Positions 33,864 to 61,354 are shown, numbered from the stretch's first letter. The stretch: 64,000 bases of DNA from IMGVR_UViG_3300028920_000001:62001-126000; one strand, 5' to 3'. Numbers and translations: made by a program. Notes: generated by a model not told the origin, from the letters alone.

Positions 33864-33917
33864 ACGGTAACCTTTAATCGCCGGCCCAAATTGGGCAAAA
33901 ATTTGACCAAAGGTCGT
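33864..33917 (-). ncRNA. circularly permuted Y-RNA-like module
   Basis: ACCUUUGGUC-AAAUUUUU-GCCC-AAUUU-GGGC-CGGC-GAUUAAAGGU-UACCG. Confidence 0.65.
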
Positions 33918-33975: not shown

Positions 33976-34105
33976 TAGTGAAAGGGGCAGGATTCGAACC
34001 CGCGACACTATGCTTTGCAACGATAACCCTAATCCTACGACCCGGGACGGGTAAAAAGGCGGAAAAGGTCTCTAACACATGCTCTACCAACTGAGCTACC
34101 CTTTC
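33976..34105 (-). ncRNA. tRNA-scaffold / Y-module chimera 1 (130 nt)
   Basis: acceptor GAAAGGG/CCCUUUC, canonical D and T arms, anticodon loop replaced by about 61 nt containing UUUUUACCC-GUCCC-GGGUCGUAGGAUUAGGGUUAUCG. Confidence 0.8.
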
Positions 34106-34108
34106 AAA

Positions 34109-34178
34109 ACGGGTAAAGAATTGATACCGGACTGTTGTCTTCAGAAAAGAGGGCGATAACCCGATATCTCCGACCCGT
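34109..34178 (-). ncRNA. Y-RNA-like RNA (70 nt)
   Basis: 5' ACGGGUCGGAGAUAUCGGGUUAUCG ... AAUUCUUUACCCGU 3'; promoter motif TGTAAAGT 5 nt upstream. Confidence 0.75.
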
Positions 34179-34199
34179 ATCAAACTTTACACCTGAAAA

Positions 34200-35050: not shown

Positions 35051-35869
35051 CTACTGGTAGATATTAACTACTGCATTATTACCGTACACTTCTTTAGCTC
35101 GTTGATCATAAGCCATGGCAGCTAATTCTTCTGTTTCAAAACTACCTATAACACGGGTCTTTCCATCGTAAAACAAACGAGCCCTCCAACTTTTACCTCC
35201 TTTTGGTTTATATACTCCCTTATACTTAGAAGTCTTCTTTTTATTCAGGGCTACTCGATCAAAGATGTCTTTCTTTCGTTCCATCCAAACTGAAGCATCT
35301 TTGTACATCCATTCTTTAATACGTAGTATTTCATATTTGCTGCTCCATTGAATCTTGTGGCATTTCTGAAATATAATTTTAGTATTCCTAATACTAAGCC
35401 TGTTTACCAAGATTGATTTAATGAATTGAACGAATTCGTATGTTCCAACAAAATAAACACAAAATAATCCATTCTTCTTTTGACTTATTCCTCCATCTCC
35501 GTCAAAATATCCTCGTATGAAATGATGGACTAATTCTAAAGGAATATAGTCGAATACTTTAGAATTTAATACTTTAGTCTTCTGCTTTGGTACGTCTTTG
35601 TCTAAAATAGAATTACATAAATATTTAGAAGATAACAAACATCGAACATGCTCATAGTTTTTACGAGTTCTTTTATCGTAAGAAGTTTTAATTCGCACAG
35701 AAACATTAAATATGGAAGCCAATTTATCTAAATGCAATTTATCTTTAGATGATAAATAAAAACAAACCTGTTTTCCATTTGGATAAATGCATCCATCGGC
35801 ACAGAAGAATCCAAACCAGTAGGCTTGCTCTTCTGTGCCGATGGTGTCGAAGAATTCTTGTCTCTTCAT
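35051..35869 (-). mobile_element. LAGLIDADG homing endonuclease with C-terminal AP2 domain
   Basis: YWFGFFCADGCI, HFIRGYFDGDGGI; AP2 KYKGVY...WRARL...IGSFETEELAAMAYD. Confidence 0.88.
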
Positions 35870-35891: not shown

Positions 35892-37637
35892 TTAAAATTC
35901 TCCTTTGGAGAAAGAAGAAATAAGATCGGGGACTGAAGTATCCATGCCACAAATGTCCAACATTCCAGGATCACGCGGGTCAGCGATGGTAAATTTATCG
36001 CTGGTTAGACCGCAAACAATCAGCCGAGCTTGACGGCCCATTTCCTGCCGATACTTACGCAGGGCCTGAAAGGGCTGCATGCGGCCGGCCCACGTTTCAT
36101 TGTCCGTGTAGACCATGAACGTATCAACTTCGATCTTGTGCTTTAGAGCATACAGCATTGGCTGTGAGCAATCAGTTCCACCGAAGTCTTGACGGGCAGT
36201 GACTTCACAAACCTGATCCAGCCGCATTTTCGGGCTGATATTCAGAACAGTTACGCCACTATCAGGATCGCTGGAAGAATTATTACGACTACCCCAACCC
36301 CAACCGCCACCGGATTCACAAGTGAATCCGATTACCTGCCAATTCTGCTCGAGCTTAGCAGTAACCATGGCCATAGCAGCTGCGGCTTCACGACAAGTCA
36401 AAGTACCACATCCTTGGATGGCAGAGCCCATAGACCCAGAAACATCCAAAGCAAGCAAGTAGTTTTTACCTGTCGGCTGAACTGACTTGAATGCCGTATA
36501 AAATGCAGAATCCATGGCATCAATTACTTGAGTTACTGGGCTCCAGCTGAGTTTACCCTTATCACCATGACCAGATTGATACTGCTTCATAGCAATCAGG
36601 ATCTTCATCGGGTGAAGACGACTCTTACGGATGGCTTCCTCGTTGGCGAACTGTTCAGCTACTTTCTTGGAAGCGGCACTCATCGGCTTGATTAGTCCAC
36701 AAGCCGTCATAACTCCCAAATTACGCGTTAGCGCTGTCATCGGAAGACCACGGTCGAGCAGAGCCTCCCAAATCTCAGGCTCTTTCTTCCACTGAGTCGG
36801 AAGCATCTCATGGCTGAGCCAATATTCATGAATCAACTTGATTACTTCCGCCTTTGATTCGGCCAGCTGGACGGCTTCGAAACCATGGACCAGCTTCGGC
36901 AGAGCTTCCCGATTGAGCTCCTCATAGGAGTCCATACGAGAGTCCTTCTTCTGGCCCTTTCTGAGCACTTCTCGGGCCTCGAGGCTACCATCTTGGGTAA
37001 CCCACCGAAATAGCGCTTGATAAGCTCCGGAATCCATTTCCGGGTCACGACGGACCAATTCAAATGGGTTGGCGTGGCTCAGCTTCAGAAGATCCTTGTG
37101 GGACCATCCATTTCGTTGCTGATACTTGACCAATTGAAGAGCCAACTTATCGGCCGGCTTATCGAGATACCAATTAGCTACAGCATTCCGAAGAGCCCGT
37201 CCCCAACGCCGGAAATTCTCAACATCAGCCGCAAAGTTGAATAGATCAGTACCAATACGGCAAACCTTCGGTAAAGCTTGAAGGGCCGCCTTTCGCACTT
37301 CATTATCCGAATGACCGGCTGCCATGGCGAGACAGAATACTGCCGGATCATTTTTGACCGCACGACCTGCCTGGCTGATTTCAGCGATACGCTTGACTGT
37401 CCGGATACCGTCTTGTTTCAGACACTCCCCAATTGCCTTAGCATTTTCCTTGACGAGCTTTTTCTCGCCAACGTAATAAGTCGAACCCTCAGCACCAAGA
37501 ATCAAAAACCGGTCTAAGCTAGTCCAGCAATCGACCTGCCAAACATAACCGCCTGCACGGTTCTTGACCTGATCCTCACGAGCTTGCTCACTCTGAGAAG
37601 TTACTCGTGGATTGACAATTTCTCCATACCTGGTCAT
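35892..37637 (-). CDS. rsr: Ro60 / TROVE-domain RNA-binding protein with vWA domain (Rsr-like)
   Basis: start MTRYG at 37637 after AGGAG; NRAGGY, LDRFLILGAEG.TYY, KYQQRNGWSHKDLLKLSH, ALTRNLG.MT, RLHP, vWA LALDVSGSM, TDNETW, D..MLD.CG.D. Confidence 0.93.
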   Translation of the reverse strand: MTRYGEIVNPRVTSQSEQAREDQVKNRAGGYVWQVDCWTSLDRFLILGAEGSTYYVGEKKLVKENAKAIGECLKQDGIRTVKRIAEISQAGRAVKNDPAVFCLAMAAGHSDNEVRKAALQALPKVCRIGTDLFNFAADVENFRRWGRALRNAVANWYLDKPADKLALQLVKYQQRNGWSHKDLLKLSHANPFELVRRDPEMDSGAYQALFRWVTQDGSLEAREVLRKGQKKDSRMDSYEELNREALPKLVHGFEAVQLAESKAEVIKLIHEYWLSHEMLPTQWKKEPEIWEALLDRGLPMTALTRNLGVMTACGLIKPMSAASKKVAEQFANEEAIRKSRLHPMKILIAMKQYQSGHGDKGKLSWSPVTQVIDAMDSAFYTAFKSVQPTGKNYLLALDVSGSMGSAIQGCGTLTCREAAAAMAMVTAKLEQNWQVIGFTCESGGGWGWGSRNNSSSDPDSGVTVLNISPKMRLDQVCEVTARQDFGGTDCSQPMLYALKHKIEVDTFMVYTDNETWAGRMQPFQALRKYRQEMGRQARLIVCGLTSDKFTIADPRDPGMLDICGMDTSVPDLISSFSKGEF

Positions 37638-37695
37638 GGTTTTTTCTCCTTGAACGGCCCGAAATTCAGGCAAAAACCCAGATAGCGAAATCTGG
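37638..37695 (-). promoter_or_regulatory. Y-RNA-like module in the Ro60 5' UTR overlapping its Shine-Dalgarno
   Basis: GGUUUUU-GCCUG-AAUUU-CGGGC-CGUUC-AAGGAG-AAAAAACC-AUG. Confidence 0.6.
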
Positions 37696-37753
37696 AAAAA
37701 TCTACATTTGAGAAATCCGGCTTTACGATTATTATTGTCAGTTTCTTGAAGAA

Positions 37754-38260
37754 ATGAGCAAAAATGATGGAAAGAATGGAGATACAGCTAAAAAGGGTCT
37801 ACTTTATCTTTTAGTTGGTCTGACTCCTGTAACCATTTTGTCGATTGTTGCTTTCGGCACTAGTGATCCTAAAGAAGGAGGTAAATCTGCTCTAAAAGGA
37901 TTAGTCCAGGCTTTTATTAATGCTGGTCCATTAGGCTTAGCTGCTTTCATATTTATTTTATCTACTTTTATTCTCGGATACTTGGCCTGGAAATCTAAAC
38001 AAGAACAAATCCAATTCATGGAAAGCGTAATTGACGCTGGAAAAGAAGAAATTAAAGAAAACCAAAACTTCACCAATACCCAAACTAAAGCATATCTAGA
38101 ATTAGCTGATACCATTAAAGAAAGCAATACCAAAATTCATGAGCTTGTCAAGGCATTATCTGCAGCAGAAAAAAAGTTAACCAAACGGGTTGATGCTATT
38201 GCATTATCCGATCCTCATGTCGATACGTCAAGATATTTAGCTCAAAGAGGCGAGGATTAA
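37754..38260 (+). CDS. 2-TM membrane protein (holin-like/lysis-module candidate)
   Basis: two TM helices plus coiled-coil C-terminus. Confidence 0.5.
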   Translation: MSKNDGKNGDTAKKGLLYLLVGLTPVTILSIVAFGTSDPKEGGKSALKGLVQAFINAGPLGLAAFIFILSTFILGYLAWKSKQEQIQFMESVIDAGKEEIKENQNFTNTQTKAYLELADTIKESNTKIHELVKALSAAEKKLTKRVDAIALSDPHVDTSRYLAQRGED

Positions 38261-50503: not shown

Positions 50504-50633
50504 TAGTGCCCCGAACAGGATTTGAACCTGTAACATCCGGCTTGAATGGCGATAACCCTTATCCTCCGGCCCGAATCGGGCAAAAAATCGGCAAGGATAT
50601 TTTACGGCGCTCTATCCGTTGAGCTATCGGGGC
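50504..50633 (-). ncRNA. tRNA-scaffold / Y-module chimera 2 (130 nt)
   Basis: acceptor GCCCCGA/UCGGGGC, D and T arms canonical; insert AUCCUUGCCGAUUUUUUGCCCG-AUU-CGGGCCGGAGGAUAAGGGUUAUCGCC. Confidence 0.8.
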
Positions 50634-50748: not shown

Positions 50749-50750
50749 AA

Positions 50751-50880
50751 ACGGGCAAAAAATCGTGAATGGATGTTGAAGGTTGGATTCGAACCAACGA
50801 CCTCCGGATGTTAGTCCGGCGCTCTAACCACTGAGCTACTCGCTCGATTGATGGGCGATAACCCACACACTCCGGCCCGT
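50751..50880 (-). ncRNA. Y-RNA-like RNA carrying an internal degenerate tRNA cloverleaf (130 nt)
   Basis: 5' ACGGGCCGGAGUGUGUGGGUUAUCGCC ... D-arm, CCGGA-CUAACA-UCCGG (6-nt loop), T-arm ... AUCCAUUCACGAUUUUUUGCCCGU 3'; 2-nt spacers to flanking tRNAs. Confidence 0.75.
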
Positions 50881-50882
50881 AT

Positions 50883-56877: not shown

Positions 56878-56942
56878 ACGGGCAAAAAATTGACGGAAGG
56901 CAGTTTCGTTTACAAGGCGATAACCTTCAATCTCCGGCCCGT
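56878..56942 (-). ncRNA. Y-RNA-like RNA (65 nt)
   Basis: ACGGGCCGGAGAUUGAAGGUUAUCGCC...CCUUCCGUCAAUUUUUUGCCCGU; 2 nt upstream of tRNA-Thr. Confidence 0.75.
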
Positions 56943-56965
56943 AAATCTTTTTGTAGAGTCAAAAC

Positions 56966-61254: not shown

Positions 61255-61354
61255 TAGTCCGGGAGATAAGATTTGAACTTACGATAACCATCCTTCAACG
61301 GCCCGTACACGGGCAAAGAACGATGGACGGATGGCCGCCATGGCCAACTCCCGG
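61255..61354 (-). ncRNA. tRNA-scaffold / Y-module chimera 3 (100 nt, no anticodon stem)
   Basis: acceptor CCGGGAG/CUCCCGG, D-arm GGCC/GGCC, T-arm GUAAG-UUCAAAU-CUUAU; insert UUCUUUGCCCGU-GU-ACGGGCCGUUGAAGGAUGGUUAUC. Confidence 0.75.

What the first reader, a model, noticed from the sequence alone, without database searches (positions are those of the whole stretch)
37638..37695. Y-module mimic over the Ro60 ribosome-binding site: candidate translational autoregulation
Seen: immediately upstream of the Ro60 ATG (37637) the mRNA reads GGUUUUU-GCCUG-AAUUU-CGGGC-CGUUC-AAGGAG-AAAAAACC-AUG. This is the permuted module (U-tract, GCCYG/CGGGC stem, CG) found at 33864 and 61255, with the Shine-Dalgarno AAGGAG in the position of the N9 segment. 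GGUUUUU can also pair with AAAAACC next to the AUG. The GGUUAUCG box is missing. Inference: free Ro60 binds its own leader and blocks initiation when Y RNAs are limiting.
Basis: partly seen in the sequence, partly recalled or inferred. Interest (0 to 1): 0.74.

Follow-up and report, generated by a model that had tools for sequence, protein, structure and literature searches.

The report
Y-RNA-like hairpin guarding Ro60 start
Just upstream of a giant phage's Ro60 gene sits a small RNA hairpin that copies the Ro60-binding stem of the phage's own Y RNAs and touches the ribosome-binding site; the same layout recurs in many other phages and several bacterial phyla, so Ro60 probably limits its own synthesis by binding its own messenger.

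Summary
Upstream of the Ro60 start (ATG 37637, - strand) there is a U-tract, a 6-bp hairpin (37671-37657), then CG, and 3 nt later the Shine-Dalgarno AAGGAG. UUUG-stem...stem-C-CG is also the signature of the Ro-binding stem of this phage's Y RNAs, of bacterial Y RNAs and of nematode stem-bulge RNAs. The GGUUAUCG box of the Y RNAs is absent.

- A hairpin with this signature ends 10-30 nt before the Ro60 start in 31 of 54 unique viral relatives (chance about 0.003 per locus).
- It does so in 9 of 79 bacterial rsr loci from four phyla, and in cultured Streptomyces and Rhodococcus phages.
- The stems differ and covary.
- RNAalifold recovers the hairpin from leaders chosen by position only.
- In several bacteria the CGAAAGGAG after the stem is itself the Shine-Dalgarno.

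The GGUUUUU/AAAAACC closing helix is not conserved.

Best reading: a hairpin-closed minimal Ro60 site acting as a translational operator. Ro60 binding and repression are inferred, not shown. I found no report of it in the library searched. It is a new member of the class of ligand-mimic autoregulatory operators.

The parts
35892..37637 (-). Ro60 (TROVE + vWA) gene, 581 aa, the presumed regulated gene and presumed trans-acting binder
   Evidence: Pfam TROVE 1e-42 and vWA_Ro60 2e-62. PDB: human RO60 2e-123, Xenopus Ro60 8e-122. The start at ATG 37637 agrees with alignments to relatives from residue 1.
37646..37651 (-). Shine-Dalgarno AAGGAG, 8 nt before the ATG and 3 nt after the CG that follows the hairpin
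   Evidence: Read directly from the sequence.
37655..37676 (-). Core element: U-tract UUUUU (37676-37672), hairpin GCCUGA-AUU-UCGGGC (37671-37657; 6 bp, one U-G pair), then CG (37656-37655). This is a hairpin-closed copy of the Ro-binding stem of Y RNAs.
   Evidence: hairpin present in all predicted folds. Descriptor hit. CM R1 21.9 bits. Homologous position and signature in relatives.
37638..37645 (-). A-rich spacer AAAAAACC between SD and ATG. It can pair with GGUUUUU (37678-37672) in the isolated leader.
   Evidence: MFE of the 50-nt leader. Not kept in longer folds or in relatives.
37677..37696 (-). Upstream hairpin CCAGAU-UUCGCU-AUCUGG followed by the U-run. It is terminator-like by pattern. 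Its 3' arm can alternatively pair with CCAGGU of codons 2-4 (37633-37628).
   Evidence: Pattern scan. The 83-nt and 61-nt folds use the alternative pairing. Not seen in relatives; function unknown.
61282..61322 (-). Reference copy: hairpin-closed Y module UUCUUU-GCCCG-UGUA-CGGGC-CG-UUGAAGGAU-GGUUAUCG, the closest match to the leader
   Evidence: 19.6 bits, E 0.0065.
50550..50589 (-). Reference copy: hairpin-closed Y module inside the anticodon arm of a 127-nt tRNA-like RNA (50507-50633)
33865..33904 (-). Reference copy: hairpin-closed Y module UUUUU-GCCCA-AUU-UGGGC-CG-N9-GGUUACCG
34106..34182 (-). Canonical (open-ended) Y RNA: 5' strand ACGGGU-CGGAG...GGGUUAUCG, 3' strand UUCUUUACCCGU. It shows what the stem is a copy of.
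   Evidence: Rfam ceN72-3_ceN74-2 (nematode stem-bulge RNA) 24.9 bits, E 0.0037 in the local search, below that family's gathering score of 38; the alignment covers both strands of the stem. YrlA 18.1 bits, also far below gathering.

Best explanation
The 5' untranslated leader of the phage Ro60 mRNA carries a minimal, hairpin-closed copy of the Ro60-binding stem of Y RNAs: U-tract, G-C closed helix, extra C, then G. It lacks the effector half, the GGUUAUCG box and the tRNA-like domain. It ends 3 nt before the Shine-Dalgarno.

Proposed mechanism: Ro60 that is not occupied by Y RNA binds this stem, and its roughly 60-kDa ring keeps the 30S subunit off the adjacent RBS. Ro60 synthesis is thereby tied to the amount of free Y RNA, which is autogenous translational repression by molecular mimicry.

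Shown here:
- The element exists.
- It shares the Y-stem signature.
- It is conserved in position, with covarying stems, across distant phages and bacteria.

Inferred:
- Ro60 binding (my estimate about 0.65).
- A repressive outcome and competition by Y RNAs (about 0.5 overall).
For: 1. Signature identity. The phage's Y RNAs read CGGGY-CGGAG...GGUUAUCG on the 5' strand and UUUUUU-GCCCG on the 3' strand. The Rfam stem-bulge RNA consensus is UCGGUC-CGGAG...GGGUUAUC...CUUGACCGU. The leader has UUUUUG-CCUGA...UCGGG-C-CG.

2. Published recognition. The Rsr motif is GNCGAAN0-1G, likened to the GGUCCGA contacted by Xenopus Ro60, mainly on the 5' strand (PMC4201824).

3. Position-specific conservation.
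- The descriptor hits within -50..+12 of the Ro60 start in 31 of 54 unique viral loci. Background is 29 hits in 608 kb, giving a per-locus chance of 0.003 and a binomial P of 6e-64.
- It hits in 9 of 79 bacterial loci (window -50..+45), P 6e-6: Myxococcota, Chloroflexota, Armatimonadota and a Brocadia.

4. Covariation. There are at least 15 different stems, among them GCUGC, GCUGUC, GUUGGC, GAUUAAG, GUUCACU, GCCCC and GCCUGA.
- On 36 leaders chosen only by position, RNAalifold predicts exactly this helix and nothing else. All 5 pairs carry compensatory changes.
- The flanks are nearly invariant: U 35/36, G 35/36, C 34/36, G 32/36.

5. Coupling to the RBS.
- The CG lies 10-30 nt before the start everywhere.
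- Chloroflexia and Capsulimonadaceae have UUGCCCC-loop-GGGGC-CGAAAGGAG-N6-AUG. The closest Ro60 (L131, 53% identity) has UUUGCCCGG-GUUU-CCGGGC-CGGAGGG-N6-AUG, so there the motif is the SD.

6. The element stands alone in the mRNA.
- The upstream gene in the window is divergent.
- L003 and L006 have a sigma-70-like promoter ending about 25 nt upstream of the hairpin.

7. The same genomes hold hairpin-closed stems in full Y modules with the same stem sequence as the leader: the window, L177, L188 and L201.

8. Precedent. Thermus phage phiLo Ro60 shifts RNAs with CGAA hairpins taken from the noncoding region upstream of its own gene (PMC12135203).

9. Cultured phages carry it: Streptomyces phages BoomerJR and Karp, with variant flanks Tribute, and Rhodococcus phage Trina.
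Against: - No binding or expression data exist.
- The window's leader has CG followed by UU. The Y RNAs have CGGA or CGAA, so it matches the published motif only in part. In leaders generally the base after CG is U, C or A, never G in the 36 rows.
- In the large L017 clade the leader stem (mostly GCUGC) does not track the stems of the neighbouring Y RNAs.
- The element is absent from many Ro60 genes. About 40% of viral loci lack it, as do most of the 72 metagenome loci, mycobacteriophage cluster C and Atu_ph07. It is not a universal feature of Ro60 control.
- No promoter was found for the window's gene. That the hairpin is transcribed with the mRNA is inferred here from relatives.
- Fold energies are not distinguishable from shuffles.
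- The descriptor was written after seeing the first examples.
Confidence: 0.5

Rival explanations
1. Ro60 does bind the hairpin, but the outcome is not repression. Binding might protect the 5' end of the mRNA, couple synthesis of Ro60 to its loading, or open U-tract/SD pairing and so activate translation.
For: - The evidence for a Ro-like site is the same as for the main explanation.
- In some leaders the U-tract is predicted to pair with the SD purines (L031, L032, L064, L177, L188, L131).
- Xenopus Ro60 is reported to pry the Y stem apart (PMC12135203), which could in principle free an SD.
Against: - A bulky protein bound 3-20 nt from the SD is expected to hinder 30S binding. Known operators at this position are repressive (established knowledge of r-protein, thrS and T4 regA systems).
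- U-tract/SD pairing is not consistent across leaders.
Confidence: 0.15
2. It is a conserved 5'-UTR hairpin with a Ro60-independent role, such as a stabilising stem-loop, an RNase processing signal that separates the mRNA from upstream Y RNA or tRNA transcripts, or a site for another factor.
For: - In many relatives Y RNAs or tRNA-like genes lie directly upstream in the same orientation, so processing must occur.
- Hairpins near 5' ends commonly stabilise bacterial mRNAs (established knowledge).
Against: - A generic hairpin does not need the invariant unpaired flanks UUG and C-CG, which are the Y-stem signature.
- The element also occurs where no Y RNA is upstream: the window, and L003/L006 with their own promoter.
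- Genome-wide it is found at no other gene start.
Confidence: 0.15
3. It is a very small stand-alone Y-like RNA, or the last unit of a Y RNA array, that happens to lie next to the gene. It binds Ro60 as a free RNA and has no cis effect on translation.
For: - Tandem junctions of the form UUG-stem-loop-stem-C-CGAAG...GGUUAUC are common near bacterial rsr genes.
- The phiLo RNAs upstream of Ro60 were interpreted as Y-like RNAs.
Against: - The leaders lack the GGUUAUC half in all cases.
- The distance to the SD is constrained, and in several lineages the motif overlaps the SD itself.
- There is no terminator between hairpin and start.
Confidence: 0.1
4. It is a non-functional relic of recombination with a Y RNA gene, and the similarity is a chance or historical by-product.
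For: - The window's leader is nearly identical over 15 nt to the module at 61305-61291, as expected after a recent duplication.
- The 93%-identical relative L220 has an identical leader, so within this lineage there is no variation to test.
Against: A relic would not persist at the same distance from the start, with compensatory stem changes, across Ro60 proteins only 40-50% identical and across phyla.
Confidence: 0.05

Closest known systems
Ro60-binding stem of Y RNAs (metazoan Y RNAs, nematode stem-bulge RNAs, bacterial YrlA/Yrn1)
   Same: A helix closed by a G-C pair. The 3' strand starts ...UUG. The 5' strand ends ...C followed by an extra C and then G. A U-rich stretch lies opposite. The stem has the same sequence as in the phage's own Y RNAs (GCCYG/CGGGC).
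   Different: It is closed by a 3-nt loop at the end that is open in Y RNAs. It lies inside an mRNA leader rather than a discrete small RNA. It has no GGUUAUC box, large loop or tRNA-like domain. After CG it has UU, where Y RNAs have GA or AA.
Autogenous translational operators that mimic the protein's main RNA ligand (E. coli thrS operator mimicking the tRNA-Thr anticodon arm; ribosomal protein operators for S8, S15, L1, L20; phage T4 regA and gene 32; MS2 coat protein hairpin)
   Same: A small structured element in the gene's own leader, at or next to the RBS, that resembles the primary binding site of the encoded RNA-binding protein. The expected logic of titration by the primary ligand is also shared.
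   Different: The protein is Ro60 (TROVE family), for which no such control appears in the library I searched. Binding and repression are not demonstrated.
Yrl1/Yrl2 of Thermus phage phiLo (PMC12135203)
   Same: Hairpins with a CGAA-type motif encoded in the noncoding region just upstream of a phage Ro60 gene, shown by EMSA to bind that Ro60.
   Different: They were described as free Y-like RNAs that tether PNPase. No relation to the RBS or to autoregulation was proposed. I could not compare sequence or distance to the start codon.

Membership tests
Y RNA (Ro60-binding small RNA) | 5'-strand recognition motif GNCGAAN0-1G (bacteria) or GGUCCGA (metazoa) | tested here: not met
   The leader reads GGGCCGUUC: GNCG is present, but AA is replaced by UU (motif from PMC4201824). 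The phage's own Y RNAs read GCCGGAG. Some relatives' leaders do carry the full motif, for example L042, L044-L046, L177 and BoomerJR.
Y RNA (Ro60-binding small RNA) | Conserved helix with 3' strand ...UUG-stem and 5' strand stem-C-(C)-G, that is a bulged-C helix | tested here: met
   UUUUUG-CCUGA / UCGGG-C-C-G. The flanks are nearly invariant in 36 leaders.
Y RNA (Ro60-binding small RNA) | Stem formed by the 5' and 3' ends of a discrete 70-130-nt RNA | tested here: not met
   The stem is closed by a 3-nt loop and is followed directly by SD and ATG.
Y RNA (Ro60-binding small RNA) | Second module: large loop, UUAUC/GGUUAUC box or tRNA-like domain | tested here: not met
   There is no GGTTAYC in 37638-37753. 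Leaders of relatives lack it too.
Y RNA (Ro60-binding small RNA) | Bound by Ro60 | not testable with these tools
   Complex prediction did not fold a protein-RNA pair.
Ligand-mimic autogenous translational operator | Cis element in the regulated gene's own leader, overlapping or adjacent to the RBS | tested here: met
   The CG is 3 nt from the SD and 17 nt from the ATG. The position is conserved in relatives, and the element overlaps the SD in L131, L177, L188, L197, L201, L203 and L205.
Ligand-mimic autogenous translational operator | Resembles the protein's primary RNA binding site | tested here: met
   Same stem and flanks as the hairpin-closed and canonical Y modules of the same genome. 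The same holds in L177, L188 and L201.
Ligand-mimic autogenous translational operator | Evolutionary conservation of the structure (covariation) | tested here: met
   RNAalifold on position-selected leaders gives 5 of 5 pairs with compensatory changes. Counts on the descriptor-selected alignment agree but are circular.
Ligand-mimic autogenous translational operator | The encoded protein binds the operator and lowers translation, relieved by the primary ligand | not testable with these tools
   No binding, toeprint, reporter or RNA-seq data are available.
Intrinsic terminator / attenuator | G+C-rich stem followed by a U-run | tested here: not met
   For the core hairpin the U-run precedes the stem. 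Only the upstream hairpin 37696-37677 fits the pattern, and it is not seen in relatives.

The most novel reading that the evidence does not exclude
Ro60/Rsr proteins of many phages and of several bacterial phyla control their own translation through a minimal hairpin-closed Y-stem operator at the RBS. Ro60 output would then be set by the pool of free Y RNA. The operator would define the smallest natural Ro60 recognition unit (UUG-helix-C-CG), separated from the effector half of Y RNAs.
Probability: 0.4. Interest if true: 0.75.

Novelty: new member of a known kind. Interest (0 to 1): 0.64.

Why it matters
How Ro60 levels are matched to Y RNA levels is not known in any organism, and the minimal RNA determinants for bacterial and phage Ro60 binding are only loosely defined.

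- A natural 25-nt element that keeps only the Ro-binding half of a Y RNA, sits on the RBS and recurs from jumbo phages to Chloroflexota would give a simple, testable feedback circuit.
- It would also give a compact probe for Ro60 recognition.
- It occurs in cultured Streptomyces and Rhodococcus phages, so the idea can be tested at the bench.
- It would add an autoantigen-family protein to the classic list of RNA-binding proteins that regulate themselves by mimicry.

Tried and rejected
- Complex prediction (Ro60 plus the 47-nt leader): the job was counted but not folded. It is no evidence either way.
- Rfam: nothing at the leader at gathering or E-value thresholds. A 14-bit 'poplar-1' match on the opposite strand is noise.
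- Megablast of the locus against cultured phages: no match.
- Sequencing runs: only DNA runs were found, the best holder a marine-sediment metagenome. No RNA.
- Covariance model R1 from 30 leaders: too small (32 positions) to find the bacterial leaders with default filters. Only L170 appeared, at E 0.3. I used an explicit descriptor instead.
- Pair counts on alignment A1 are circular, because the rows were picked with a pairing descriptor. I replaced them with RNAalifold on position-selected leaders.
- Closing helix GGUUUUU/AAAAACC as a conserved feature: rejected.
- Match of the leader stem to the phage's own Y stems as a general rule: it holds in the window, L024, L177, L188 and L201, but not in the L017 clade.
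- Other genes with the same operator in this genome: the remaining descriptor hits lie in coding sequence or a tRNA. The hit at genome position 193814 encodes a hydrophobic C-terminus.
- The 93%-identical relative L220 has an identical leader and is uninformative.
- Pfam gave nothing for the upstream + strand ORF, and PHROGs gave only marginal matches for it and nothing for the other two + ORFs. Its strand was settled by a codon-usage score.
- A literature check for the Y RNA-binding residues of Xenopus Ro60 found nothing usable.

Full report
CONTEXT. The window is bases 62001-126000 of a 426,960-bp viral record with direct terminal repeats, a jumbo phage. G+C is about 38%. The best DNA holder is a marine-sediment metagenome. 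The window carries a tmRNA, about 25 tRNAs and a Ro60 gene on the - strand (35892-37637). The gene matches Pfam TROVE 1e-42 and vWA_Ro60 2e-62. It is very close to solved Ro60 structures: human 9nen 2e-123, Xenopus 1yvp 8e-122, D. radiodurans Rsr 3e-99. A LAGLIDADG/AP2 homing endonuclease follows it.

THE OBSERVATION.
- GGG, UUUUU (37676-37672)
- GCCUGA (37671-37666), AUU, UCGGGC (37662-37657)
- CG (37656-37655), UUC
- AAGGAG (37651-37646), AAAAAACC, AUG (37637)

The gene upstream is divergent. Three + strand ORFs with overlapping stops and starts begin at 37754, and that frame has the best codon-usage score of all six. The element therefore stands alone in a 116-nt intergenic region and is not the tail of an upstream Y RNA. 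A further hairpin (37696-37677) precedes the U-run.

WHAT THE 'MODULES' ARE.
- GGTTAYCG occurs nine times in the window, always on the - strand, against 1.7 expected.
- Nearly every copy is preceded by YGGGYCGG(AG)-N6-8.
- The stretch 34182-34106 aligns to the Rfam model of nematode stem-bulge RNAs. Its consensus is UCGGUCCGGAG...GGGUUAUC...CUUGACCGU, and the match covers both strands of the stem at 24.9 bits (E 0.0037 in the local search, below that family's gathering score of 38). It aligns weakly to YrlA at 18.1 bits.
- That these stem-bulge RNAs are regarded as the nematode counterparts of Y RNAs is my own knowledge, not checked here.
- The bacterial Rsr motif in the literature is GNCGAAN0-1G. 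It is likened to the GGUCCGA that Xenopus Ro60 contacts, mostly on the 5' strand (PMC4201824).

So these are Y RNAs. Their Ro-binding stem has the 5' strand CGGGC-C-GGAG and the 3' strand UUUUUU-GCCCG. Some are canonical, with open ends: 34173-34106, 56950-56884, and one with a tRNA-like insert around 50880-50750. Others are closed by a short loop at the end that is normally open: 61322-61282, 50589-50550 and 34060-34021 (both inside 127-nt tRNA-like RNAs) and 33904-33865. The leader is a copy of the hairpin-closed form up to the CG. After that the SD and start codon replace the GGUUAUCG half.

MORE THAN CHANCE WITHIN THE GENOME.
- The 15-mer CGGGCCGTTSAAGGA occurs exactly twice in the window, at the leader and at 61305-61291.
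- A descriptor (TTTG, stem of 5 bp or more closed by G-C, loop 3-12, then C, CG) finds 12 sites in the whole genome against 5.9 in Markov simulations. Four are the leader and three Y modules. The other eight lie in coding sequence or a tRNA.

RELATIVES, THE DECISIVE EVIDENCE. I fetched three sets of Ro60 loci:
- IMG/VR viral contigs
- 80 bacterial genome loci
- 80 metagenome loci

In the viral set, the descriptor (TTG flank, loop 3-14) hits with its end between -50 and +12 of the Ro60 start in 31 of 54 unique loci. Only 29 hits occur in the remaining 608 kb of both strands, and several of those are Y modules. The per-locus chance is 0.003 and the binomial P is 6e-64.

The stems differ widely: GAUUAAG, GCUAC, GCUGC, GCUGUC, GUUGAC, GUUGGC, GCUGCC, GCUGUUU, GUUCACU, GCUCGC and GCCUGA.

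The descriptor demands pairing, so I also took 36 leaders purely by position (-58 to +3 of the start, all unique members of the largest clade plus the window and one other clade). RNAalifold returned this helix as the only consensus structure, and all five pairs show compensatory changes. The flanking U, U, G and C, C, G are 89-97% conserved, while the stem interior varies.

In L003 and L006 a sigma-70-like promoter (TTTACA-17-TATAAT or TACAAT) ends about 25 nt upstream of the hairpin. This places the hairpin in the 5' UTR.

BACTERIA AND CULTURED PHAGES.
- Nine of 79 bacterial loci carry the element at the start (window -50..+45; chance 0.016 per locus, P 6e-6).
- Chloroflexia and Capsulimonadaceae read UUGCCCC-loop-GGGGC-CGAAAGGAG-N6-AUG.
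- The closest Ro60 of all (L131, a Byssovorax MAG, 53% identity) reads UUUGCCCGG-GUUU-CCGGGC-CGGAGGG-N6-AUG. Here the purines that follow C-CG in true Y RNAs are the Shine-Dalgarno. GAAAGGAG is in any case a strong SD, so that overlap carries less weight than the hairpin and its flanks.
- In L177, L188 and L201 the leader stem equals the stem of hairpin-closed Y modules in the same locus, as in the window.
- 356 cultured phage records encode a Ro60. Streptomyces phages BoomerJR (UUGCCCU-AAA-AGGGC-CGGAAAGGA) and Karp carry the element. Streptomyces phage Tribute and Rhodococcus phage Trina carry it with variant flanks. Mycobacteriophage Rabinovish has a canonical Y RNA upstream but no clear hairpin at the SD. 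Atu_ph07 has no leader.
- In the more diverse metagenome set only about 8 of 72 loci pass the strict descriptor. Looser forms (stem, C-CG, SD) are visible in others, for example L221, L225 and L227.
- Verrucomicrobial rsr leaders have a different conserved hairpin that carries GNCGARAG.

WHAT IS NOT CONSERVED OR NOT SHOWN.
- The GGUUUUU/AAAAACC helix is the MFE only for the isolated 50-nt leader. It is replaced in longer contexts and has no counterpart in relatives.
- Fold energies are ordinary (z -0.8 and -1.3).
- In the largest clade the leader stem does not follow the neighbouring Y stems.
- The base after CG in leaders is U, C or A. Y RNAs have G or A followed by A.
- The window's leader matches the published motif only as GNCG.
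- No sigma-70-like promoter was found for the window's gene.
- Binding could not be modelled, and no RNA data exist.

MECHANISM. The best-supported reading is a cis-acting Ro60 site at the RBS, a ligand-mimic translational operator. The site keeps the Ro-binding half of a Y RNA and drops the effector half. That is what one expects of an element that must bind Ro60 but recruit nothing. It ends 3-20 nt from the SD, within the region a 30S subunit must occupy.

Free Ro60 would bind and block initiation. Y RNAs, with the fuller motif, would compete. The weaker match after CG fits an operator of lower affinity than the primary ligand, but that point is inference.

Experimental precedent exists. Thermus phage phiLo Ro60 shifts RNAs with CGAA hairpins taken from the noncoding region upstream of its own gene, although the authors treat them as free Y-like RNAs (PMC12135203).

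My estimates:
- conserved functional RNA element: 0.9
- bound by Ro60: 0.65
- negative autoregulation: 0.5

Rivals are Ro60 binding with another outcome, a Ro-independent stabilising or processing hairpin, a tiny free Y-like RNA, and a relic. The last is disfavoured by conservation with covariation.

COMPARISON AND NOVELTY. It works like the thrS, ribosomal-protein, T4 regA/gene 32 and MS2 coat operators. It is not a Y RNA: three defining features fail, namely open-ended stem, second module and full motif. Three full-text searches, plus reading of the two most relevant papers, found no proposal of Ro60/Rsr autoregulation or of a Y-like site in the rsr leader. The Annual Review on bacterial Ro60 was not held, so this is absence in the searched library and not proof of novelty. 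I class it as a new member of a known kind, of clear interest to the Ro60 and Y RNA field and directly testable in cultured actinophages.

Noticed in passing
window 33979-34105 and 50507-50633 (- strand): Two 127-nt RNAs match the whole Rfam tRNA model (48-49 bits). Each has an insert of about 60 nt in the anticodon arm that is a hairpin-closed Ro-binding stem plus the GGUUAUCG box. They look like tRNA-shaped Y RNAs with normal tRNA termini, that is permuted relative to YrlA.
   Followed up: partly
window 50750-50882 (- strand): A YrlA-like unit lies between tRNA-Ile and tRNA-Val. The 5' strand ACGGGCCGGAG...GGGUUAUCG and the 3' strand UUUUUUGCCCGU enclose a tRNA-like element (50777-50845).
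   Followed up: partly
window 56884-56950 (- strand): A compact canonical Y RNA (ACGGGCCGGAG...GGUUAUCG...UUUUUUGCCCGU) abuts tRNA-Thr directly, which suggests co-transcription and release by tRNA-processing enzymes.
   Followed up: no
window 37677-37696 and 37628-37633 (- strand): The upstream hairpin CCAGAU-UUCGCU-AUCUGG is followed by the U-run and is terminator-like by pattern. Its 3' arm can instead pair with CCAGGU of codons 2-4, enclosing the RBS. This could be an alternative-structure switch. It is not seen in relatives.
   Followed up: partly
window 35051-35869 (- strand): A LAGLIDADG plus AP2-domain homing endonuclease gene lies immediately downstream of Ro60. Streptomyces phage Tribute has an HNH endonuclease at the same place (L215).
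   Followed up: no
L133-L198 (Verrucomicrobia rsr loci), about 35-55 nt before the start: A different conserved leader hairpin, GYGYCG-RRRGUUGG-CGRCRC, carries the Rsr-like motif GNCGARAG across the stem-loop junction. It lies between the last Y RNA (…CCAACUUGUCCGCAG) and the SD, and two of its pairs show compensatory changes.
   Followed up: partly
L131-L210, many sites 300-1000 nt upstream of rsr: Hairpin-closed junctions UUG-stem-loop-stem-C-CGAAG-N8-GGUUAUC are very common near bacterial rsr genes. They may be tandem Y RNAs whose neighbouring 3' and 5' strands can pair with each other.
   Followed up: no
L031-L067 leaders, about 40-70 nt before the Ro60 start: A second conserved block (CUGAARUYUCCGA...UUUUUG) lies upstream of the leader hairpin in the largest viral clade. 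It is probably the 3' part of the preceding Y RNA.
   Followed up: no
window 13832-14185 and 18541-18615 (- strand): The phage encodes a tmRNA (tag ANDNASLAIAA) and a tRNA-SeC-like gene (anticodon UCA), beside about 23 other tRNAs.
   Followed up: no
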